A stretch of DNA of 63,146 nucleotides, filler included, from Octopus bimaculoides (Eukaryota): assembly GCF_001194135.2 (NCBI RefSeq). It is 3 parts of 2 records of this genome, joined end to end, with 100 filler letters (N's around TTAATTAATTAA, not from the genome) between each part and the next. Parts side by side here need not be neighbours in the genome. Positions count along the whole stretch, not along the records: positions 1 to 30,583 come from NC_068982.1; 2 more parts are not named here. One strand, given 5' to 3'. Below, piece after piece: positions 1,007-30,583 of the stretch. How positions within the stretch are numbered: the first letter of the stretch is position 1; each line of letters begins with the position of its first letter. The notes under the pieces were generated by a model. That model did no database searches. It had not been told where the DNA came from and saw nothing but the letters and a program-made list of their open reading frames with translations. Position numbers and translations under genes: made by a program.

Positions 1007-1441
1007 TAATATCTCTAAGTATTGGTATTATTGTTTATTTAGCTTGGGTTGGAATCTATTAATAAACTTCTATTCTCTGATTTTTCACTGAATTTCACTT
1101 GGACTGTGTAGTTTGTAGAACGGAAATATTATTTTCTTTTCTACTCTAGGCATAAAGCCCGAAATTTTTGGGGAGGGGGTCAGTCAATTAGATCTACCTC
1201 AGTACACAACTAGTACTTAATTCATCGACCCTGAAAGGATCAAAGACAAAGTTGACCTCAGTGGAATTTGAACTCAGAACGTAAAGACTGATGAAATACT
1301 ACCAAGCATTTTGCCCAGAGTGCAAACATTCTGTCAGCTCACCTCCTTGTAGAATGGAAATATTATAAATATCTTCTGACCACATGTTGCTTGATGGTTA
1401 CTCAAAGGTATCTGAGAGACATCTGAATCTCTAATTTGCTG

Positions 1442-2320
1442 TCAGTGCATACATGAACGTTTTGATAATGCCTTTCCAGTCTGACCTACATATAGTTCTT
1501 CACAATTTGGGCATTTAATGCAACAAATTAAATTTCTGCTTTTGTAGTTCATATTTGCATTTGTGAATATTTTTCTGGTTTTTGTGTTCATATATTGGTT
1601 GGTATTGCATTTAGATACAGTGAATGATTGGTCTTTGTTGCGAAGGTCATACTTTGCTTTGTTAATAATTTTTGGTAATAATTTTTTATTAAGAACCATA
1701 GCTTGATCTGTGATTATATCTTTTAATTCATTACTTTGAGCAATGATTGTTAGGTTTACTTTGGCAATGCTGAAGATATTCTGATGACATTGGTTGTGTG
1801 TCACTATAAATGGTATGACTTGTTCCCGTTTTCCTCTTCTTTGGATTGTTCTGTATTGTTGTATGGGTATTTCTATAACCTGCTTTATGCCATTTTCTAT
1901 AAGTAGAGATGGGTATTTTTGTTTGAGCAAAAATTCTCTTAGTTCTGTTAGGCATTTGTTTCTGATATTTGCATCTTCTACAATGGTAAAAATTCTTCTG
2001 GCTAGGCAGTATGGAATATTGCATTTTGCATGTGGGGGATGGCATGACTTAAAATTCATGTGTTTGTAGTATGCCTCTGTGGTAATGGTATTGTCCTTTT
2101 TAATTACCATTATATCTAGGAATGGTAATTTGGTACTACTCATCTCCTTTGTAAATTGGAGAAATTGGTGTAGGACATTCAGTAGGATATTGAACTCTTC
2201 CAGAGTTGGGAGCTTACTTTGACAATCATCTCCATTACCCATTACAAAGCCAAATATGATGCGATCAATGAGATGAAATATCAAAACTAATGACTGGCAA
2301 TAGAGCAGAAAAAAATGCAC
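1442..2320 (-). mobile_element. Penelope-like retroelement relic (RT thumb + GIY-YIG endonuclease)
   Basis: ORF contains LPFLDIMV, SCHPPH..NIPY.LARRI and a degenerate GIY-YIG segment NLICCIKCPNCEELYVGQTG..LSKR. The RT catalytic region is decayed. Confidence 0.85.
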
Positions 2321-2767: not shown

Positions 2768-3121
2768 NNNNNNNNNNNNNNNNNNNNNNNNNNNNNNNNN
2801 NNNNNNNNNNNNNNNNNNNNNNNNNNNNNNNNNNNNNNNNNNNNNNNNNNNNNNNNNNNNNNNNNNNNNNNNNNNNNNNNNNNNNNNNNNNNNNNNNNNN
2901 NNNNNNNNNNNNNNNNNNNNNNNNNNNNNNNNNNNNNNNNNNNNNNNNNNNNNNNNNNNNNNNNNNNNNNNNNNNNNNNNNNNNNNNNNNNNNNNNNNNN
3001 NNNNNNNNNNNNNNNNNNNNNNCATTACGTGGCACCTTGGGCAAATGTCTCTACTATAGCCTCAGGCCGACCAAAGCCTTGTGAGTGGATTTGGTAGACA
3101 GAAACTCAAAGAAGCCTGTCG

Positions 3122-3154
<33 letters not shown>

Positions 3155-3959
3155 ATACGTTTGTGTGTCTGTGTTTGTACCCTCAATATCGCTTGACAAC
3201 CGATAGTGGTGTGTGTGCACCCCTGTAATTTAGCATTTCGGCAAAAGAGACCGATAGAATAAGTGCTGGGCTTACAAAGAATAAGTCCTGGGGTCGATTT
3301 GCTCAACTAAAGGCGGTGCTCCAGCATGGCCACACTCAAATGACTGAAACAAGTAAAAGAGTAAAAGAGTAAAGAGTATATATATATATATATGCGCGCA
3401 CGCACGTGTGTATACACACACACACACACACAAATGCACACACATATGAGTGAACAAATGAAAAAGTAGCACTCAATACCTTTAGTAGGAGTTACATATA
3501 TTATTTAATAACAGTTTGATTTAGCTCCAAATAACTTCAAATTTCATGGGGATATATGACATGTCCATCTCATCAGAAGTTAGATGGTAGAGTCTGCTTC
3601 CTTATGGGGAACTAAGTCCAACCGTTGTTTAATGTGTGTGTATACATATATATATATACAGAGAGAGAGAGAGAGAGAGAGATAGATAGATAGATAAAGC
3701 TGCTCTATGGGATTACTCTGGGTTTCCCGTCCATAAGGTGCTTAGCTTTACAACATATCAAACCCCAAAACCTGTTAGCACAAGGCCTCTGTAGCAAGTG
3801 ACCTCTCTAGAAAATGGAGGAGGAAAAGATTTTGTTACTCTGTCAATGAAAGGGGATTGTCTCCCTTTGGCTGTTATTCATAACCGACTTTTTTATTGTG
3901 TCCCAAGATCCCAGGACATTAGCAGGAATTTTCTGGAAGTGCAAATAGGGTCTGAAGAC

Positions 3960-4075
3960 TTCCATTCTGAAGTTAAGAATGTTCCCTTGCCCATTCAGCT
4001 ATGCACAGTTTACAATGCTTGGTCTTGTTTATGTAGGGGCCTGGATTTTTTTAAGAATCTCCATGATATTACATG
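3960..4075 (-). mobile_element. Short Penelope-like C-terminal fragment
   Basis: Minus-strand PGPYINKTKHCKLCIAE resembles the PY...KRCNLC..EK terminus of PLE ORFs. Confidence 0.45.
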
Positions 4076-5062
4076 TTGAATTCCTTCATCCTTCAACTAC
4101 CATATATCCCCCGAACCCGCCCTGCCGTTTCCCGCCTCCCTTTTCCCCTCATCTACCATTCCACCAACCTACCCCTCCAACGCTCCATTCTCCGAGCTTT
4201 CCGGCGCCTCCAGTCCGATCTCTCCACCTCCCACATCTTCCCTAATCGACCCCTCCCCTCCTTCAAACGAGCCCATAACCTACAAGACCTCTTGGTCCAC
4301 AGCTTCTTCCCCAACCCAACCTCCCNNNNNNNNNNNNNNNNNNNNNNNNNNNNNNNNNNNNNNNNNNNNNNNNNNNNNNNNNNNNNNNNNNNNNNNNNNN
4401 NNNNNNNNNNNNNNNNNNNNNNNNNNNNNNNNNNNNNNNNNNNNNNNNNNNNNNNNNNNNNNNNNNNNNNNNNNNNNNNNNNNNNNNNNNNNNNNNNNNN
4501 NNNNNNNNNNNNNNNNNNNNNNNNNNNNNNNNNNNNNNNNNNNNNNNNNNNNNNNNNNNNNNNNNNNNNNNNNNNNNNNNNNNNNNNNNNNNNNNNNNNN
4601 NNNNNNNNNNNNNNNNNNNNNNNNNNNNNNNNNNNNNNNNNNNNNNNNNNNNNNNNNNNNNNNNNNNNNNNNNNNNNNNNNNNNNNNNNNNNNNNNNNNN
4701 NNNNNNNNNNNNNNNNNNNNNNNNNNNNNNNNNNNNNNNNNNNNNNNNNNNNNNNNNNNNNNNNNNNNNNNNNNNNNNNNNNNTCGCTCCTTTGTGCCAC
4801 ATGGGCTCAACTCCCCTCCCCTCTTCATCTAACCCCCCTCCCCCTGCCTCTCTCTAACTTCCGGTCAGCCATTACTATGATTGACCGTTGACTGAACACT
4901 ATTCAATTTTTTTTCTCCGTGTTTTTCTCCTTGTCTCCGTATTCTTTCTGTTGAAGAGCGTAGCTCGAAACGTTAAAGACTTTCCTGAGCGTCATACTAA
5001 TACATCCTTTTGTTGTTTACACCACCTGTCCTCATCTGTTGTTGTTTTTTAGTACATTCTCC
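4073..5062 (+). mobile_element. Younger Penelope-like element 3' portion with terminal repeat, interrupted by a gap
   Basis: RLPFPLIYHSTNLPLQRSILRAFRRLQSD...PLPSFKRAHNLQDLLVHS is a typical PLE linker region. The 3' part 4880-5060 is similar to 61685-61872 and ends at (TA)n. Confidence 0.7.
4943..4979 (+). ncRNA. Variant hammerhead-like motif in the Penelope terminal repeat
   Basis: TCTTT-CTGTTGAA-GAGC(GTA)GCTC-GAA-ACGT-T-AAAGA: stems I and II and a palindromic mini-stem III are present, but the core reads CUGUUGAA rather than CUGANGA. Confidence 0.45.
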
Positions 5063-5401
5063 CATATATATATATATATATATATATATGGTTTCCTTTT
5101 CGGGACACTCAGATTCATCAAGCAGGAATAATCACTGGGGTCAAGTAACTTTTTCTAACTCGTGTATCATTAACATTCCCTGTGGTTAGTCAACATTTAA
5201 AAATGATTTAAAAGGTAACACAGTAGTAAGCACTAGGATTACATATCCCTTTGAACCCATTTTTAGAAATATATATATATATATATACACATACAGGCGG
5301 ACAGACGATTATGAATGTTAGAATTCATAAATTCCGATAGTTTATGATTAAAATTTAGTGATCAGTTGAGTCACAGAAATAGCAATTAATAGTAGACTTA
5401 C

Positions 5402-5651
5402 CTCCAATGGTTGATTTTCTTCAGAAGCCAATACAATAATACTCGGTACACCAACAAATACAGCTCGTAGATTCCTGAGAAATCCTCCAATAAAAGGCAC
5501 TACTTTACAGTCTGGAATATCTAAGGACCTGTTGACTGCTTCCCGAAATTCTCTGCTTGGTTCAGCAGACAATAATAGCTCTGATAAGGATTGGAAACTC
5601 CTCCTTTCATTTTCACTCAAATTTAACCAAAATGGTTTCAGCTTATCAGAT
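5402..5651 (-). CDS. PLCE1: Phospholipase C-epsilon exon, RasGEF (CDC25) domain
   Basis: 250-nt exon with acceptor ttttaataaatttcag| and donor gag|gtaagt, phase 2 to 0. Translates (R/K)SDKLKPFWLNLSENERRSFQSLSELLLSAEPSREFREAVNRSLDIPDCKVVPFIGGFLRNLRAVFVGVPSIIVLASEENQPLE, matching the remembered human PLCE1 segment [28 protein letters not shown]...QEETLE. Confidence 0.88.
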
Positions 5652-10989: not shown

Positions 10990-13140
10990 GTGAATAGATA
11001 AAATCATCATGGCTAAACATATAAGACTCCTTCAACCAACTCATGACTACAATCACTGTATAGAATGGGCCTACAGTTTTAACAAAGATTTATATGAAGC
11101 ATATAATGTATAGTCTGACCCTCAAAAGTTCAGATTTATGCAAGGGCTAAAAACTTTGTGAAACTCCAAACACCCAGATTTAGATTTTTCTCTGAAACAT
11201 TTAAATGAACAAGCAAAACATATCACTAGATGTAAATTGAAACATCTAACAGAAGTGTTTGATTCAGAGCAAACTGGCACTATAAAACCAGCCATTGAAA
11301 TAATCATTCCACTTCAAATGAGGGATAGCTAGAACAGTCTGCTAAATCTGGTAGTAAACAACATACCAGCAGTTTAGCAGAAATTCATATCTGTATTGTA
11401 CAAGCAGAAGAATACCAAAAGCTTGTGGATGCCTTACAAGTGATCTGAAATGGTATGTTTCAACAGGTCCACAACCTTAATTTGAATGACAGGCCATACA
11501 ACACCACTATAAGTAAAGAACCCAGTAAATTAGAATTAGAGGCAGTAAGTGAAATTACAAACAAATATAAGATCACACAGTCCAGAGGTCTGAAAATACC
11601 CTACAAAACCATTAATCTTTCGATATATGTCTCACCTATTATATTACTAGTGTATCACAAAGAGCTAAAGCCACATGATTGAGATTCAAGCAGAAAGCCT
11701 GAACTAGCATGGGCACATAAACATAAAAATAAAATTTAATTCCTACAAAAAAATAAACCAAAGATTGTTTTAGTTATGAAATGTAATACAGAGAACAACT
11801 TCTCACAACATCAGGAGGACCTCAGAAAAAATACAAAGGCAATTTAGTGAACCAGGATTGAAAAACCTAAACTCCAAACTGCACCAGCTGAAACAACTCA
11901 CAGCTACAGCTGAAAAGCTAAAATATAAATCTACGGCATATGAATGACAGACCCAGACCTCATAACAGGTTACTAGCTGAAGAATTTCATCTTTTATATG
12001 TGTGATCTCTTATGGTTGTATAGAGAATGTATCAAAGGCACATAAAAACTTCCCCAATGAGTATGAAATGCAACTACTCTCCTCATCCCCCAAAACAGCT
12101 AAACCATCCTTGATGAAAATTATCACCCTATACCCTGCCAGAACCTCATATACAAATTATACACTGGGTACCTCAATCTGTTCTTGCAGGATCATTGTGC
12201 CAACTAAGAAAATGTAAGGCTGTATACATCAGCAACTGATTAATAAAATGCCCCGGGGAAAAAAACAGTAAAAGATTACAGAAATTTAACCAGTGTGGCT
12301 GGACTACCAGCAGGCTTTTGATAACATACCACATGGGTGGATTATCAAAGCTTTACAGTTAGCAAAATTCTCAGCAACTATTGAATACTTGACCAAGACA
12401 TGACACACAACTTTATTCCTCAGGAGTGATAAGGAGCAAATTGAGTCGGATAGCACTCACTACAAAAATGCATCTTTCAGAGTGATAGCCTGTTGGTATT
12501 GCTCTTCATTCTCTCATTAAATCCACTATCATACCTGCTCACAAAACATAGTGACCACAGAAATAGATCCAGAAGTATCTCTAATCTTTTTTTTGTTGAT
12601 GAACCGAAGCTGTATGGCTCAAATATCAACCACATAAAATAATAACTGGATCACATTACCCAATTTTCTACAAATATTGGAATGATTTGTGCATCATTAA
12701 CCTGCTAGAGGAGATGTCCTCTTGTGGTTAAAAAATTGCAGTAGAGTTCACTCAGATGGATAGCCATGCTAAAGTGGCTAGTGATATTACTTGTCACCTA
12801 CAGATAATGTTGACTATATTGAGAGTGATGGGTCAAAAGAATTTTGGTGGAACTTAGAAATTAAGACAGCCATCGAGTTAAAACATCGCCAATCAGACAT
12901 TGTTGTGTGAGACTACAAGGAAAAACTATGTTGTTATGGAAATCAGCTGCCCTCTGGATACTAATGTGATTAGAAAAATACAAGAGAAATAGGATATCTA
13001 CGGACCATTGATAAGGAGTTTGCAAATCCAGTACTCAACATATGCTTTCAGCTGCATACCTATTATTATTGGAGAGACAGGATGCATATCAACCAGTCTG
13101 GAGAAAAGTTTGGCTGAACTTCGGAATTTGGGGATGATGA
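10990..13140 (+). mobile_element. Decayed R4/Dong-like non-LTR retrotransposon
   Basis: Frame-broken motifs DYQQAFDNIPHGWIIKALQLAK, NPLSYLL, FVD(D)xKLYG and the RLE segment KHRQSDIVV...EISCPLDTNV..K..EK...Y..L...IPIIIGETG. Confidence 0.8.
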
Positions 13141-14715: not shown

Positions 14716-15150
14716 GGTGCAGGAGCGGCTGTGTGGTAAGTAGCTTGCTTACCAACCACATAGTCCCAGGTTCATTCCCACTGCATTGCAGTTTGGGCAA
14801 GTGTTTTCTACTATAGCCTCAGGCCAACCAAAACCTTGTGGGTAGATTTCGTAGACGGAAACTGGAAGAAGCCCGTTGTATATGTGTGTGTATATATATA
14901 TATATATATGTATGTATATGTGTGTATATGCTTGTGTGTCTGTTTGTCCCTCCAGCATCGCTTGACAACCAATGCTGGTGTGTTTACATTCCCGTAACTT
15001 AGCGGTTTGGAAAAACAGACCGATAGAATAAGTACTAGGCTTACAAAGAATAAGCTCTGGGGTTGATTTGCTCGACTATAAAGGCGGTGCTCCAGTATGG
15101 CCGCAGACAAATGACTGAAACAAGTAATAGAGTAAAAGAGTGTAAGAGTA
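14716..15150 (+). mobile_element. tRNA-derived SINE family B, near full length
   Basis: Head gcaggagcggctgtgtggtaag...ggttca, TTGGGCAAGTG core, internal TA/TG microsatellite and (AAAAGAGT)-like tail. Other copies at about 3023-3373 (+), 13160-13330 (+), 18893-18990 (+), 21715-21880 (+), 26195-26340 (-) and 60960-61050 (-). Confidence 0.85.
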
Positions 15151-15635
15151 TATTTCTAATGAATCATACATTTTATTTAACTTTGAAAGTAATCAAGAAG
15201 TTGGAGGGAAAAGGTAAAACAACTGACTTTGCCTTTTGATACCAACCTGCCTGTAACTACCTCTGGTTCTGTAATGCAAACTTCCTATTTTAAAGGATCT
15301 AAATTAAAACTTTCTTTCAAAATTGATCTATGTTTAGAACACCTGTTTAATAATAGCTTTTAAATTTTGGCACAAGGCCAGTACTGTCAAGGTCAGTATT
15401 CAACTGGTACTTATTTTATTAACCCCGAAAGGATGAAAGGTTAGTCAACTTTGGTGGAATTTGAACTCAGAACATAAAGATGGATGAAATGCCAAGAAGC
15501 ATTTTGTCCAGTGTGCTAACAATTCTACCAACTCACCACCTTTAAAAGATGAACTACAACTCAGAATGTAAAGAGCCAGAAGCAATACCAGCAGCTACTT
15601 GGTCTGACAGTCAAACAATCCTATCTTTAATGATT

Positions 15636-19009: not shown

Positions 19010-19335
19010 GCCCATGCTGGTGGTATGTAAAAAGCACCATATGCGTGTGGTCAATGCCACTGCTGCCTGACTGTCACCTGTGCTGGTGGCACATAAAAAG
19101 CACAATTCAAGTGTGGTCAATACCAGTTCCGCTTGACTGGCCTCATGCCAGTGGCTCATAAAAAGCACCCACTACACCACTCTCAGAGTGGTTGGCGTTA
19201 GGAAGGACATCCAACAGTAAAAACCTTGCCAGATCAGATTGGAGCCTGGTGTACCCTCCTGGCTTGCCAGTCCACAGTCAAACCACCCAACCCATGCCAT
19301 CATGGAAAGCAGACATTAAACTATGATGATGATGG
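19010..19335 (+). mobile_element. Dispersed repeat family C (SINE-like, (GAT)n tail)
   Basis: Internal roughly 60-bp subrepeats tgctggtggca..taaaaagcac and 3' end ccatgcca.catggaaag..gac.ttaaa.gatgatgat. Relatives at about 17945-18500 (-), 25650-26125 (+), 13400-13625 (+), 58620-58880 (+), 5690-5900 (-) and 10350-10500 (-). Confidence 0.7.
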
Positions 19336-21924: not shown

Positions 21925-22329
21925 GCACACACACACATACACACAATCATATCACTGAACATGTGTCTTCCATGCTGGCATAAGTTGGATGATTCATGAT
22001 TCAATAGGATTCAACAAGCCAGAGGATTGTATTAAACTCCAGTGTCTGCTTTGGGGAGCTTTCTATGTTTGAATGCTCTTTCTAATGCCATCAGTTTTAC
22101 AGAGTGTACTGGGTACTTTTTTCTTGGCAATGGCCTTTGTAAGATCAGCAAGGACAAAGTCCTCTGAGTAGAGGTTTCCTAGACAGGAAAGTGGTTTTAT
22201 GACAAGGTAGAAAAGCTTAAAGTAGGATAAAGAGAGACAACTATCTATTTATCTGATTGTTCATCCATCCATCTATCCATCCATCTACCCATTACTCCCG
22301 CCTCTCTCTCTCTCTCTTTCTCCAATATA

Positions 22330-22706
22330 TACACACACGCATATCTAATATATACACACACACATATCTAATATATACACACACATATCTAATATACACA
22401 CACACACATCTAATATACACACACACACATATCTAATATACACACACACACATATCTAATATACACACACACACACATATCTAATATACACACACACACA
22501 CATATCTAATATACACACACACACACATATCTAATATACACACACACATATCTAATATACACACACACATATCTAATATACACACACACACATATCTAAT
22601 ATACACACACACACATATCTAATATACACACACACATATCTAACATACACACACACATATCTAATACACACACACACATATCTAATACACACACACACAC
22701 ACACAC
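22330..22706. repeat. Minisatellite of about 20 bp, (CA)n-TATCTAATAT
   Basis: Well over a dozen tandem units of acacacatatctaatat with variable CA number. Confidence 0.9.
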
Positions 22707-22772
22707 GCTCATGAGCACATATGTGCAAAGCAATGTGGAGAAAATATAGTAAGTATATATATATATATATAT

Positions 22773-23058
22773 ATAAGCCAGCTGGAGGAGATGTCCTCCT
22801 GGGGCTAAAAGCAACAGTAACATCCACCACTAGGGGTCAGCCACACTTAAGTGGCAATATACTACACTTTATCGTGCAGTTACTGTTAATACTTCATTTA
22901 GAGAATTAACATTGCTTGTTTTCACCTTTTCAATATCAGTGAAGAATTTCACTGGAAAAGAAGATATAAGGTTTGCCAGGTTTTTGTCTCTCTCACCAAG
23001 GTCAGCAGCTGTCGAACGCCGATGAAGGGAAATAACCCTGAAATCCGGATACGTTCGT
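22773..23058 (+). mobile_element. Retrozyme-like / Penelope pLTR-like repeat, copy 1 (right end runs into a gap)
   Basis: About six differences by eye from the reverse complement of 30238-30583. Starts at a (TA)n tract, contains a hammerhead fold and several hairpins. Confidence 0.75.
23013..23057 (+). ncRNA. Type I hammerhead ribozyme
   Basis: CGAACG-CCGATGA-AGGG(AAATAA)CCCT-GAA-ATCCGGAT-A-CGTTCG: 6-bp stem I, core CCGANGA (U4C variant of CUGANGA), 4-bp stem II, GAAA, palindromic stem III, predicted cleavage after AUA at 23051. Confidence 0.82.
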
Positions 23059-23384
23059 NNNNNNNNNNNNNNNNNNNNNNNNNNNNNNNNNNNNNNNNNN
23101 NNNNNNNNNNNNNNNNNNNNNNNNNNNNNNNNNNNNNNNNNNNNNNNNNNNNNNNNNNNNNNNNNNNNNNNNNNNNNNNNNNNNNNNNNNNNNNNNNNNN
23201 NNNNNNNNNNNNNNNNNNNNNNNNNNNNNNNNNNNNNNNNNNNNNNNNNNNNNNNNNNNNNNNNNNNNNNNNNNNNNNNNNNNNNNNNNNNNNNNNNNNN
23301 NNNNNNTGTGCAAAGCAATGTGGAGAAAATATAGTAAGTATATATATATATATATATATAAATATACATGTACATATATTCTTT

Positions 23385-23599
23385 TATTCTTTTATTGTTT
23401 TACTTGTTTCAGTCATTTCACAGTGGCCATGCTGGAGCACTGCCTTTAGTCGAACAATTTGACTCCAGGACTTATTCTTTGTAAGCCTAGTACTTATTCT
23501 ATCGGTCTCTTTTGCCGAACTGCTAAGTTACAGGGATGTAAACACACTAGCATTGGTTGTCAAGTGATGGTGGGGGGACAAACACAGACACATATACAC

Positions 23600-23685
<86 letters not shown>

Positions 23686-24484: not shown

Positions 24485-25617
24485 TACCTGACATACCCTG
24501 TAATTCCCGGGAAAGTAGGGCTTATCCCTTGGAACCATTCTCATAATTGTTTTGCTAATCCAATAACAACAATACAAAGTATGTAGCCCTTAAAATGTTT
24601 TTCATGCATTTACAGAGAATACCAAACTGTCTTACAAAGGATCATGTTTTTAGAAATTCCCAATGAGTTATCAATACCCAAATTGTGATGTCAGTTATGT
24701 AATAACATGAAATTAGTTACCCGGTAGTAAGGATTCAAATAAAGTAGCCCCGAAAAGGGCTTTAATGTGTTCCCAGTGTATATAGAACGTAGGAGGAAAT
24801 ACTTGTAAGGCATGTATACTAAAATCGTGAAGCATGTAATGTAATAACAGGCTAATCAGATTTGAGATCATAACAATTCAAAGCAAATAACCCTGAAAAT
24901 GGCTTTTGTGCATTCCCAGAGAATATTACCCTCAGGGGCACTAGTGTTGGTATATACACACACACACACACACATATATATATGTGTGTGTGTGTATATG
25001 TTTGAGTGTCTGTGTTTGTCCCCCCCAACATTGCTTGACAATAGACACTGGTGTGTTTACGTCCCCGTAACCTAGCGGTTCAGCAAAAGAGACTAATAGA
25101 ATAAGTACTAGGCTTCTGAAGAATAAGTCCTGTGGTCGATTTGATCAACTAAAGGTGGTGCTCCAGCATGGCCACAGTCAAATGACTGAAACAAGTAAAA
25201 GAGTAAAAGAGTAAAAAAAGAGTAACCAAAATAAGTAGATCTATTGTTTAGGAAAATACAATTTACTTGTTTAAGGGTTGTACTGGATAAATTGCGAAAA
25301 TAACTAACAGTTTAAATACTAAAAAATGAGCATACTTAATTTCCTTTTTACTAAATAATTTAGGAAAATAAGTGGGTTATTTCCTTTGGCTATATATAAG
25401 GATCTCTTCCAGGGGCGAATGGGTTATTTCCCTTGGTTTTTAAAATAAAATATATTAGATATATATATATATATAAGGATCCCTTCCAGGATCCCTATCA
25501 TCGATTTTTTCAACAGCCTGAGTATACCATGCGGTTTCTAGACATGAGCTCTACTCATGTGTCAAGTTTCATTAAAATCGATAAAACAATGTAGGAGTTA
25601 GCTAACAACTCCATATA
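24482..25617 (+). mobile_element. Probable Helentron-type element carrying a SINE fragment (24985-25225)
   Basis: Start ACTACCTGACATACCCTGTAATTCCCGGG resembles the start at 15636; internal recurring ACCC/GGGAAATAACCC motifs; gtcaagtttcattaaaatcg near the end. Confidence 0.4.
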
Positions 25618-28860: not shown

Positions 28861-29819
28861 TGGGAATTACTGTATGCAAAGTGGTAACATTGGTAGCTGG
28901 CAGCAAATTTGTAAAAGAGGGATGAGTGGAAATCTATTCTGATTTACTAAAAGCAGTTCAAACCAATGAAGACAGACTTTTTACTGATCTGATGACATGG
29001 GATGAAATGGGACCTTATTTTTATGATCTGAAAAAAAAAAAGTCTCAGTTCATAGAATGATGTCATACCTCTTCTCTAAGGCTTAAGGAGTTCAAGAGGT
29101 AGTATGGTGGTGACTGATGTTTTGAGATGAACAAGGAGTCAATTCTCCTTGATTTTCCAGTATGTGGCTGTTCTATGAACAGTGAATGAAGCATCGTAAC
29201 ATTCAAAGGGCTTAGAAAAACCAATTTAGCAGAAGAGATGAAGTAAGGTTTTAAAACAGATCAATGGTTACCATGACAATACATGACCATGCACATCTTT
29301 AGAAACAAGTCAAGCAATTGGCAAATTGGGTTGGTCAGTTGTCCCCCCACCAGTCACTACAACCCATATCTGGTACTCTCTGACTTCTAACTGATTGGGC
29401 CAATGAATGAGATCTGAGGGACAAGGCTATAGACAAAATGCAAATATTCTGAATCACCATTGTGATTGTCATTGTTGTTGTCATAGTCACCCACATTGTT
29501 GTAATCCTCTTCCTGCTGCTGCTCATCCTCGTCGTCTTCATCATCGTCATCATTGTCGTCGTCGCCGTCGTCGTCCTCCTCCTCCTCCTCCCCCTCCTCA
29601 TAATCGTCATCATCAGCATCATTTAACAATGATGTTGGGTATGATTTAGAATGTTTACATTGTGTCTACAGATTTTAGATTTCATTCCTGAAAGTTTATA
29701 TATATATATCTATATCTATCATTAACTATATATATCTATAAAATATATATATATGTATACATATACATATATGTATACATATACATAGATACATACATAC
29801 CTCTCTCTCTCTCTCTCTT

Positions 29820-30205
29820 TTTACTCTTGTACTTGTTTCAGTCATTTGACTGTGGCCATGCTGGAGCACCGCCTCTAGTCGAGCAAGTCGACCCCAGGAC
29901 TTATTCTTTGTAAACCTAGTACTTAGTCTATCAGTCTACTTTGCCAAACCGCTAAGTTATGGTGATGTAAACACACCAGCATCGGTTGTCAAGCAATGTT
30001 GGGGGGACAAACACACACACACACAAACACATACACACACATATATATATATATACATATATATGACGGGCTTCTTTCAGTTTCCGTCTACCAAATTCAC
30101 TCACAAGGCTTTGGTTAAAAACACTTGCCCAAGGTGCCATGCAGTGGGACTGAACCAAGAACCATGTGGTTCATAAGCAAGCTACTTACCACACAGCCAC
30201 TCCTA
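29820..30205 (-). mobile_element. SINE family B, near full length
   Basis: Reverse complement of the 14716-15150 family. Confidence 0.85.
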
Positions 30206-30237
30206 CACCAATATATATCCATATATATATATATATA

Positions 30238-30583
30238 GTGTAGTATATTGCCACTTAAGTGTGGCTGACCCCTAGGGGTGGATGTTACTGTTGCTTTTAG
30301 CCCCAGGAGGACATCTCCTCCAGCTGGCTTATCGACACACGACTGTGTCCTGTTTGTCAAGGGAGTTATCCCTCTCACCGCGACCAGCAGCACGAACGTA
30401 TCCGGATTTCAGGGTTATTTCCCTTCGTCGGCGTTCGACAGCTGATGACCTTGGTGAGAGAGACAAATCTGGCAAACCTTATATCTTCTTTTCCAGTGAC
30501 ATTCTTCACTGATATTGAAAAGGTGAAAACAAGCAATGTTAATTCTCTAAATGAAGTATTAACAGTAACTGCACGATAAAGTG
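30238..30583 (-). mobile_element. Retrozyme-like repeat, copy 2: one complete 343-bp monomer running into a scaffold join
   Basis: Reverse complement reads segments B-C-A whereas copy 1 reads A-B; the CAC at 30581-30583 recurs at 30238-30240, defining the unit length. The other end abuts (TA)n. Confidence 0.78.
30393..30437 (-). ncRNA. Type I hammerhead ribozyme, second copy
   Basis: Minus strand: CGAACG-CCGACGA-AGGG(AAATAA)CCCT-GAA-ATCCGGAT-A-CGTTCG. The only change from copy 1 within the motif is at the variable core position N7. Confidence 0.82.

What the first reader, a model, noticed from the sequence alone, without database searches (positions are those of the whole stretch)
30238..30583. 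343-bp circularly permuted tandem unit: candidate non-LTR retrozyme
Seen: copy 1 reads A-B, copy 2 (minus strand) reads B-C-A, so the A-to-B junction shows head-to-tail units. Unit length is 343 bp, with no convincing ORF and one hammerhead per unit; both copies run into assembly gaps, as collapsed tandem arrays do. Known: metazoan retrozymes are small non-coding tandem repeats with a type I hammerhead that yield circular RNAs and are thought to be mobilised by Penelope-like elements. Inference: an octopus retrozyme family, or the tandem terminal repeat of an unseen Penelope element.
Basis: partly seen in the sequence, partly recalled or inferred. Interest (0 to 1): 0.88.

Follow-up and report, generated by a model that had tools for sequence, protein, structure and literature searches.

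The report
Octopus hammerhead-ribozyme tandem repeat (retrozyme)
A 343-bp non-coding repeat, present twice in this octopus-like sequence and joined head-to-tail, carries one hammerhead self-cleaving RNA motif per unit and sits inside (TA)n microsatellites, so it is most likely a new member of the known animal "retrozyme" family of small parasitic retroelements, not a new kind of element.

Summary
The repeat is real. The unit is 343 bp. Copy 1 (30238-30583) holds one full unit plus 3 nt. Copy 2 (22773-23058, opposite orientation, 97.9% identical) reads straight across the unit's end-to-start junction. No reading frame crosses a unit and no protein homologue exists. The only CUGAUGA heptamer is not a ribozyme. 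The motif lies on the other strand (30437-30393; 23013-23057). It has the canonical metazoan type I architecture: helix I 6 bp, helix II 4 bp, and helix III 2 bp with a CCGG loop, giving the palindrome AUCCGGAU for a double hammerhead. In both copies the core reads CCGANGA, so U4 is C. Rfam finds nothing, but it also misses a canonical-core octopus hammerhead of the same build. Both copies abut (TA)n tracts at different unit positions. Copy 2 plus its gap is bracketed by an exact 55-bp duplication. This fits retro-insertion by a Penelope-type enzyme, and a Penelope RT/endonuclease remnant lies at 1037-2284. Best reading: a non-LTR retrozyme, a new member of a known kind. Not tested: ribozyme activity with C4, RNA circles, and array length.

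The parts
30238..30580 (-). Copy 1: one complete 343-nt unit. The ribozyme-sense strand is the window's minus strand. The unit's 3' terminus in that sense, ...GGCAATATACTACAC, lies at 30238.
30581..30583 (-). Three further bases (GTG on the plus strand) that match the start of another unit. They are cut off by the edge of the piece and are only weak evidence that copy 1 is also tandem.
30393..30437 (-). Hammerhead motif of copy 1: CGAACG-CCGACGA-AGGG-AAAUAA-CCCU-GAA-AU-CCGG-AU-A|CGUUCG. The predicted cleavage is between 30399 (A17) and 30398 (C1.1).
30211..30237 (.). (AT)n microsatellite abutting the 3' terminus of copy 1. An octopus SINE (29820-30205) precedes it.
22773..22867 (+). Copy 2, first unit. 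It is 5'-truncated: only the last 95 nt of the unit (h249-343 in ribozyme sense) are present, and it starts directly at a (TA)n tract.
22868..23058 (+). Copy 2, second unit. The first 189 nt of the unit (191 bp here because of a 2-bp insertion) are joined head-to-tail to the first unit and run into the scaffold gap.
23013..23057 (+). Hammerhead motif of copy 2. It is identical to that of copy 1 except at the free core position N7 (U instead of C), and C4 is present here too. The predicted cleavage is between 23051 and 23052.
22722..22776 (+). Left copy of an exact 55-bp duplication, TGTGCAAAGCAATGTGGAGAAAATATAGTAAG(TA)11A. It includes the (TA)n target tract at 22754-22775.
23307..23361 (+). 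Right copy of the same 55 bp, starting at the first base after the gap. It is either a long target-site duplication or the empty-site allele placed in the scaffold.
23059..23306 (.). Scaffold gap (248 N) that hides the 3' part of copy 2.
12670..12825 (+). Diverged relative (about 65% identity) of the non-ribozyme half of the unit (q307-343 followed by q1-120). It is collinear across the same unit junction. Local score is 84 against a maximum of 40 in 100 shuffles. No hammerhead is present.
1037..2284 (-). Degraded Penelope-like element ORF (RT thumb, linker and start of the GIY-YIG endonuclease). It is the kind of enzyme thought to mobilise retrozymes, lies 20 kb or more from both copies and is not linked to them.

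Best explanation
The 343-bp unit is a member of the animal non-LTR retrozymes: small, non-coding, tandemly inserted retroelements that carry one type I hammerhead ribozyme per unit.

Proposed mechanism, with each step marked as shown or inferred.
1. Inferred: loci with at least two units are transcribed on the ribozyme-sense strand.
2. Shown in silico only: the monomeric hammerhead has a helix III of just 2 bp (A-U, U-A) capped by CCGG and is outcompeted by an inactive fold. Two hammerheads of a multimeric RNA can pair through the 8-nt palindrome AUCCGGAU into a double hammerhead that leaves both cores unpaired.
3. Inferred: cleavage after ...GGAUA releases 343-nt monomers.
4. Shown in silico: in the predicted fold, helix I and its extension hold the monomer's 5' end; the 3'-terminal ribozyme segment folds on itself in that MFE. 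The molecule is compact and branched.
5. Inferred from other retrozymes: a host RNA ligase closes the monomer into a circle.
6. Inferred: a Penelope-like RT/GIY-YIG endonuclease nicks AT-rich DNA and copies the circular or multimeric RNA. This produces 5'-truncated, more-than-unit-length head-to-tail inserts.

The two loci seen here are probably such daughter insertions, not proven source loci, because neither shows two ribozymes. The C at core position 4, present in both copies, probably weakens cleavage. Whether the family is still active is open.
For: Unit and junction. No coding capacity.

Hammerhead. All three helices and 10 of 11 invariant core positions are present in both copies, and the single difference between the copies falls on the free position N7. 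The motif is unlikely by chance: 0.02 expected per window even when any single core mismatch is allowed, and 0 hits in 8.8 Mb with the stricter form. The architecture equals the 'canonical metazoan type I' description: helix I 6 bp, helix II 4 bp, helix III 1-2 bp with a 2-4-nt palindromic loop, active as a dimer (PMC4209133).

Folding. The cofold of two 61-nt segments gives the double hammerhead with an 8-bp helix III at -47.5 kcal/mol, against 2 x -21.3 kcal/mol for separate monomers. The monomer MFE is -118.6 kcal/mol, z = -5.8, with helix I pairing the monomer's 5' end.

Insertion signatures. Copy 1 ends at unit position h343 on an (AT)n tract. Copy 2 starts at h249 on a (TA)n tract. So these are two independent events, one with a 5' truncation. 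The flanks of [copy 2 + gap] carry an exact 55-bp duplication, and the other three gaps of the piece have none. PLEs favour microsatellite and AT-rich targets, and (TA)n is listed as a preferred target (PMC8557442, PMC11167929). Retrozyme TSDs, when present, are longer than 4 bp (PMC7229834).

Context. A PLE RT/EN remnant is present in the piece, with relatives annotated in Octopus sinensis. Unit size and GC (343 bp, 45%) are within the published range of 150-450 bp and <45-50% (PMC7229834). The Rfam negative carries little weight, because a canonical-core hammerhead of the same build in O. sinensis (L002 10703-10763) is also missed.
Against: The core reads CCGANGA (U4->C) in both copies. U4C 'considerably decreases activity in vitro', although a viroid carrying it stays infectious (PMC3088659). 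No Rfam hammerhead family matches at any threshold.

Only two copies and one diverged fragment were seen. No further copy was found in 37 kb of O. sinensis DNA or in three collection scans. Copy number, consensus core and array length are therefore unknown.

Neither locus is shown to hold two ribozymes, which release of a monomer requires. No RNA data were available. The 55-bp duplication could be an assembly effect of heterozygosity and not a target-site duplication. As a monomer, the MFE fold pairs part of the core.
Confidence: 0.72

Rival explanations
1. The repeat is the pseudo-LTR (terminal partial-tandem repeat) of a full-length Penelope-like element whose ORF lies in the gap or beyond the edge of the piece.
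For: PLEs insert as partial tandems, carry hammerheads in their pLTRs and target microsatellites (PMC4209133, PMC8557442). PLE coding remnants are present in the piece. Retrozymes are reported to be related to pLTR sequences (10.64898/2026.07.22.740005). Both copies are incomplete on one side.
Against: Copy 1 reads from the unit junction through all 343 nt to a terminus on (AT)n with no ORF. The unit is therefore complete without coding sequence. Copy 2 plus its 248-N gap is bracketed by the 55-bp duplication, which leaves roughly 0.5 kb and not the 3 kb a PLE needs. There is no tblastn similarity to PLE proteins anywhere but 1037-2284, and no DNA similarity between the unit and that PLE remnant. 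The ribozyme has the canonical retrozyme-type build (helix I 6 bp, helix II 4 bp). It does not have the PLE 'min-HHR' build: helix II 7-8 bp, helix I 4-5 bp, and an extra base between positions 9 and 10.1 (PMC4209133).
Confidence: 0.08
2. It is an ordinary satellite or dispersed repeat in which the hammerhead is a dead relic (C4). No RNA is processed or circularised, and copies spread by DNA-level duplication or as passive passengers.
For: U4->C occurs in both copies, and U4C strongly lowers activity in vitro (PMC3088659). Rfam finds no hit. Only two near-identical copies and one fragment were seen, with no RNA evidence. PLE-type hammerheads are in any case weak in vitro (PMC4209133).
Against: The rest of the motif is intact in both copies, and the only difference between them falls on the free position N7. 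The two copies have different flanks and different end points, and both sit in (TA)n. This is the pattern of separate insertions, not of segmental duplication. The flank duplication or empty-site allele, together with 2% divergence, points to recent mobility.
Confidence: 0.17
3. It is an assembly artefact: the head-to-tail junction and the second copy come from mis-joined or collapsed reads.
For: The piece is a gap-rich scaffold. Copy 2 touches a gap, and the flank duplication may itself reflect allele mis-placement.
Against: The junction lies inside contiguous sequence 94 bp from one end and 190 bp from the other. The copies differ at 5 substitutions and one indel, so they are not the same reads. 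An old diverged fragment at 12670-12825 is collinear across the same junction.
Confidence: 0.03

Closest known systems
Metazoan non-LTR retrozymes (Cervera & de la Pena 2020, PMC7229834): coral 220-240 bp, mussel, and axolotl 330/350 bp repeats
   Same: Both are short tandem non-coding units with one type I hammerhead per unit. Both have moderate or low GC, no LTR/PBS/PPT, a self-paired monomer and long TSDs when present. The axolotl HHR_Amex2 also has a 2-bp helix III capped by a tetraloop.
   Different: No sequence similarity was tested or found. The core has C4 instead of U4. 10.1-11.1 is A-U and not the usual G-C. Expression as circles is unknown here. Cephalopods are not among the taxa described in the papers I could search.
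Newt satellite 2 (about 330 bp) and Schistosoma Sm-alpha (about 335 bp) hammerhead repeats (from my own knowledge; summarised in PMC7229834 and PMC4209133)
   Same: The unit length is almost the same. Both have a type I hammerhead with a weak helix III and a palindromic loop that works as a double hammerhead in multimeric transcripts. Both have a 4-bp helix II with a 6-nt A-rich loop.
   Different: These come from different phyla and are unrelated in sequence as far as tested. Those ribozymes have the CUGAUGA core and proven cleavage.
Penelope-like element pLTR hammerheads ('min-HHR', PMC4209133)
   Same: Both are type I, have a palindromic helix III, are dimer-dependent, and are associated with AT-rich and microsatellite targets and partial-tandem insertions.
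   Different: min-HHRs have a long helix II (7-8 bp), a short helix I (4-5 bp) and an extra base after A9. The present motif has the canonical 6/4 bp build and no adjoining RT/EN ORF.
U4C hammerhead variant of a viroid (cited in Perreault et al. 2011, PMC3088659)
   Same: It has the same single core substitution and is reported to keep enough activity in vivo.
   Different: It is a plant viroid with a type III ribozyme, and a sporadic variant rather than the form seen in every known copy of a family.
Type I hammerhead in Octopus sinensis scaffold VCDQ01011892.1 (locus L002 10703-10763, found here)
   Same: It comes from the same genus-level host. It has the same build (helix I 5 bp, A10.1-U11.1, helix III 2 bp with the palindromic tetraloop UGCA, UA|CG cleavage site), its element ends on a (TA)n tract, and Rfam also misses it.
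   Different: It has the canonical CUGAUGA core, a long loop 2, no sequence similarity to the 343-bp unit, and only a single copy was seen.

Membership tests
Hammerhead ribozyme, type I | Invariant core C3 U4 G5 A6 N7 G8 A9 ... G12 A13 A14 A15.1-U16.1 H17 | tested here: inconclusive
   10 of 11 invariant positions are present in both copies, and U4 is C. U4C is a documented natural variant with reduced in vitro activity (PMC3088659). Activity was not testable.
Hammerhead ribozyme, type I | Three helices around the core, with helix I open (the 5' and 3' ends of the motif) | tested here: met
   Helix I is 6 bp (CGAACG/CGUUCG) with a further CAGC/GCUG extension. Helix II is 4 bp with loop AAAUAA. 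Helix III is A-U, U-A plus CCGG.
Hammerhead ribozyme, type I | Match to the curated covariance models (Rfam hammerhead families) | tested here: not met
   No hit at gathering score or at E<=10, even on 81 nt. The control, a canonical-core octopus hammerhead of the same build, is also not detected, so the test has little power for this class.
Canonical metazoan type I hammerhead (dimer-dependent) | Helix I about 6 bp, helix II about 4 bp, helix III 1-2 bp with a 2-4-nt palindromic loop allowing a double hammerhead (PMC4209133) | tested here: met
   The build is 6 bp / 4 bp / 2 bp plus CCGG. AUCCGGAU is an 8-nt palindrome, and the cofold predicts the double hammerhead.
Canonical metazoan type I hammerhead (dimer-dependent) | Loop 1 - loop 2 tertiary contacts | not testable with these tools
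   An internal loop (UGU/U) follows the 6-bp helix I, and loop 2 is A-rich. Whether they interact needs comparison with many copies or an experiment.
Non-LTR retrozyme | Short unit (150-450 bp) in head-to-tail copies, each with a type I hammerhead | tested here: met
   The unit is 343 bp. The junction is read through in copy 2, and 3 nt of a next unit are present in copy 1. Only about 1.3 and just over 1.0 units are visible, and two ribozymes at one locus are not shown.
Non-LTR retrozyme | Non-coding; no LTR, PBS or PPT | tested here: met
   The longest open stretch is 92 codons, with no homologues. There are no terminal repeats other than the unit itself. PBS and PPT were not searched for specifically.
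Non-LTR retrozyme | Low GC (<45-50%) | tested here: met
   The unit is 45.5% GC, against 36% for the piece. This is at the upper end of the published range.
Non-LTR retrozyme | Expressed as linear and circular monomer RNA; self-cleavage at the ribozyme site | not testable with these tools
   No transcriptome or read data for the host were available. Only in-silico folds were made.
Non-LTR retrozyme | Many dispersed copies and arrays in the genome | tested here: inconclusive
   There are two copies and one old fragment in 30.6 kb. None were found in 37 kb of O. sinensis. No octopus genome could be searched.
Penelope-like element pLTR | The repeat flanks an RT + GIY-YIG ORF (units about 3 kb apart) | tested here: not met
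   There is no PLE protein similarity near either copy. The unit is complete in 343 nt. About 0.5 kb lies between the duplicated flanks of copy 2. The far side of copy 1 is not visible.

The most novel reading that the evidence does not exclude
A recently mobile cephalopod retrozyme family whose hammerhead carries C at the normally invariant core position 4 in all copies and is nevertheless processed in vivo. This would be the first family-wide natural U4C hammerhead in an animal. Alternatively, it would be a retrozyme that keeps spreading through a Penelope enzyme although its ribozyme is crippled, showing that cleavage and circularisation are dispensable for mobilisation.
Probability: 0.2. 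Interest if true: 0.55.

Novelty: new member of a known kind. Interest (0 to 1): 0.4.

Why it matters
Animal retrozymes are a recently recognised and still poorly catalogued class of mobile element. They give rise to abundant small circular RNAs, and their link to Penelope-like elements is under active study.

A cephalopod family would extend the catalogue within molluscs, where a mussel has been studied. It would come with clean insertion signatures: a (TA)n target, a 5' truncation, and a 55-bp duplication or a filled/empty allele pair. These bear on how the elements integrate.

The fixed U4->C in an otherwise intact ribozyme offers a simple test of two questions. One is whether the invariant uridine is dispensable in a natural tertiary-stabilised, dimeric hammerhead. 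The other is whether ribozyme activity is needed for spread.

A practical lesson is that Rfam models miss this class of octopus hammerhead altogether, so genome annotations will not show them.

Tried and rejected
1. The plus-strand CUGAUGA at about 30442 as the ribozyme. Rejected: no helix II or GAAA, and the heptamer is mutated to CUGCUGA in copy 2.

2. Rfam at gathering score and at E<=10 on the whole piece, on both copies and on an 81-nt slice. No ribozyme family of any class was found. A control showed that the models also miss a canonical-core octopus hammerhead.

3. Fetching more copies through proteins. The four longest unit frames were concatenated as one query and found no homologue. 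A RasGEF-like exon at 5348-5620 was used to reach the orthologous or extended locus, but no protein shares words with it.

4. Two O. sinensis loci reached through the PLE ORF (37.6 kb in total) contain no copy of the unit.

5. Exact-pattern scans for the ribozyme core in metagenome, viral and prokaryote collections gave 0 hits, as expected for an animal repeat.

6. tRNA or SINE-like origin: no tRNA-like gene in the piece.

7. General gap-flank duplication artefact: the other three gaps have no unique-sequence duplication.

8. Coding tandem repeat: rejected.

9. Similarity between the unit and the PLE remnants in the piece: none.

Full report
**What is in the sequence.**
The segment 30238-30583 recurs once in the piece, on the opposite strand. 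q155-346 matches 23058-22865 and q1-95 matches 22867-22773, and the two matches overlap by 3 nt. A gapped alignment of copy 2 against a dimer of the first 343 nt is collinear across the end-to-start junction (...GATAAAGTG|TAGTATATT...). It shows 5 substitutions and one 2-bp indel in 286 bp. The unit is therefore 343 bp. Copy 1 is one whole unit plus 3 nt that agree with the start of another. Copy 2 is the last 95 nt of one unit followed by the first 189 nt of the next.

Copy 2 runs into a real scaffold gap (N 23059-23306). Copy 1 is cut by the edge of the piece, so nothing can be said about a gap there.

A third, old fragment at 12670-12825 (about 65% identity; local score 84 against at most 40 in 100 shuffles) covers q307-343 followed by q1-120. 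It is collinear across the same junction. Continuity across the junction is therefore a property of the family and not of one locus.

**No coding capacity.**
In a tandem context the longest stop-free stretch on either strand is 92 codons, less than one unit, and 343 is not divisible by 3. A protein search with the four longest frames found nothing among 5.8 billion sequences.

**The hammerhead.**
Rfam reports no family at gathering score for the whole piece. It reports no ribozyme at E<=10 for either copy or for an 81-nt slice. The only CUGAUGA heptamer (plus strand of copy 1) has no helix II or GAAA behind it and reads CUGCUGA in copy 2. It is not a ribozyme.

A complete type I motif lies on the other strand:

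5'-CGAACG / CCGACGA / AGGG-AAAUAA-CCCU / GAA / AU-CCGG-AU / A | CGUUCG-3'

It occupies 30437-30393 on the minus strand in copy 1 and 23013-23057 on the plus strand in copy 2. Its features are:
- Helix I is 6 bp, followed by an internal loop and a further CAGC/GCUG stem.
- Helix II is 4 bp with a 6-nt A-rich loop.
- G12, A13 and A14 are present.
- Helix III is A15.1-U16.1 and U15.2-A16.2 capped by the palindromic tetraloop CCGG.
- The cleavage triplet is AUA.

This matches the published description of canonical metazoan type I hammerheads: helix I 6 bp, helix II 4 bp, and helix III 1-2 bp with a small palindromic loop, active only as dimers (PMC4209133).

The one departure is C instead of U at core position 4, in both copies. 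The only difference between the two copies inside the 45 nt is at N7, the one free core position.

A descriptor that allows any single mismatch in the 11 core positions, with helix I >=6 bp and helix II >=4 bp, gives 0.02 hits expected per window in simulated sequence. The version with C or U at position 4 gave none in 8.8 Mb. The palindrome was not used in either descriptor. The motif is therefore not a chance match.

**Why the Rfam negative carries little weight.**
While sampling Octopus sinensis DNA I found a type I hammerhead at L002 10703-10763. It has the canonical CUGAUGA core and the same build: helix I 5 bp, A10.1-U11.1, helix III 2 bp plus UGCA, and a UA|CG cleavage site. Rfam misses it too, both at gathering score and at E<=10 on 86 nt.

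**Predicted behaviour of the RNA.**
Alone, the 61-nt ribozyme segment prefers a fold that pairs part of the core (-21.3 kcal/mol). The hammerhead fold of the 45-nt motif is worth only -6.0 kcal/mol, against an MFE of -13.8.

Two segments together are predicted to form the double hammerhead. The cores stay unpaired, helix II forms within each strand, and AUCCGGAU pairs between the strands as an 8-bp helix III. The energy is -47.5 kcal/mol, about 5 kcal/mol better than two separate monomers. This is the behaviour described for newt satellite 2, axolotl retrozymes and PLE hammerheads: cleavage in multimers and stability as monomers (PMC4209133, PMC7229834).

The 343-nt monomer, written from the predicted 5' end C1.1 to A17, folds into a compact branched structure. 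Its MFE is -118.6 kcal/mol with z = -5.8 against dinucleotide shuffles. In that fold the 5' end is held by helix I and its extension, while the last 30-odd nt, which carry the rest of the ribozyme, fold on themselves. The complementary strand folds almost as well (z = -5.5), so this speaks for self-complementarity and not for a particular strand.

**Insertion signatures.**
In ribozyme sense, copy 1 ends at ...GGCAATATACTACAC directly on an (AT)n tract (30211-30237). Copy 2 begins, 5'-truncated at unit position 249, directly on a (TA)n tract (22754-22775). The flanks and the end points differ, so these are two separate events.

The 55 bp TGTGCAAAGCAATGTGGAGAAAATATAGTAAG(TA)11A occur identically at 22722-22776, left of copy 2, and at 23307-23361, the first bases after the gap. 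The other three gaps of the piece show no such duplication. Two readings are possible:
- The insert made a target-site duplication of at least 55 bp.
- The insertion is heterozygous, and the empty allele was scaffolded next to the filled one.

Either way, an insert of roughly 0.44-0.55 kb (1.3-1.6 units, if the gap estimate is right) sits in a (TA)n tract.

Penelope-like elements insert as 5'-truncated partial tandems, prefer microsatellites, with (TA)n listed as a preferred target, and nick AT-rich DNA (PMC8557442, PMC11167929). Metazoan retrozymes have TSDs longer than 4 bp when any are seen (PMC7229834).

The piece also carries a degraded PLE ORF at 1037-2284 on the minus strand. It spans the RT thumb to the start of the GIY-YIG endonuclease. 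It is 67% identical to an O. sinensis protein, and its relatives carry RVT_1 and GIY-YIG domains. A second PLE-like ORF lies at 4073-4325. Neither is linked to the repeat or similar to it.

**Interpretation.**
The pLTR alternative is unlikely for four reasons:
- The unit is complete in 343 nt.
- There is no room for an ORF at copy 2.
- There is no PLE coding similarity nearby.
- The ribozyme has the retrozyme-type build and not the PLE min-HHR build.

A 'dead relic' reading cannot be excluded, because U4C 'considerably decreases activity in vitro', although a viroid with it stays infectious (PMC3088659). Against it stand the intact remainder of the motif and the signs of recent insertion. Neither visible locus holds two ribozymes, so both are more likely daughter insertions than source arrays.

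**Comparison and novelty.**
Size, organisation, ribozyme build and presumed dimer dependence match axolotl, newt, Schistosoma, coral and mussel elements (PMC7229834). A 2026 preprint ties such elements to PLE pLTRs (10.64898/2026.07.22.740005). A full-text search for retrozyme plus octopus found no paper describing one in cephalopods. A search combining hammerhead, Penelope-like and cephalopod found only the Naiad paper. This is a new member of a known kind. Its one unusual trait is C4 in every copy seen.

**Limits.**
No octopus genome or transcriptome could be searched. Copy number, consensus, array length, transcription, cleavage and circularisation remain untested.

Noticed in passing
L002 10703-10763 (Octopus sinensis VCDQ01011892.1), plus strand: A canonical-core type I hammerhead, CUACG-CUGAUGA-AGCUA...UAGCU-GAAA-C-UGCA-G-U-A|CGUAG. 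It sits in a short non-coding element that ends on a (TA)n tract at about 10926. It is unrelated in sequence to the 343-bp unit and invisible to Rfam. Octopus genomes appear to hold several hammerhead-bearing small elements.
   Followed up: partly
window 1037-2284 (minus strand) and 4073-4325 (plus strand): Two degraded Penelope-like element fragments in opposite orientation. The first runs from the RT thumb into the GIY-YIG endonuclease, with stops and frameshifts beyond 1346. The second is cut by the gap at 4326-4783. No hammerhead was found next to either.
   Followed up: partly
window 5348-5620 (minus strand): A 90-codon ORF with a weak RasGEF-domain match (E = 0.00097, below Pfam's cut-off). 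It could be an exon or a pseudo-exon. No protein in the large database shares words with it.
   Followed up: partly
window 22324-22701: A 21-bp minisatellite (AATATACACACACACACATATCT, about 17 copies, 92% matches) lies 50 bp from the (TA)n tract that received copy 2.
   Followed up: no
window 29820-30205, 23376-23680, 24974-25213, 14912-15155, 3030-3371: Several copies of an octopus SINE (...GTCATTTGACTGTGGCCATGCTGGAGCACCGCC...), 82-87% identical to copies in O. sinensis. They carry internal (CA)n/(TA)n tracts. Both retrozyme insertions lie in (TA)n tracts next to such SINEs.
   Followed up: partly
window 19011-19169: A 66-bp tandem repeat (2.4 copies, 74% matches) of unknown nature.
   Followed up: no
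window 29458-29600: A run of trinucleotide repeats (TCG/TCC/CAT). On the minus strand it would encode an acidic Asp/Glu-rich stretch, so it could be part of an exon.
   Followed up: no
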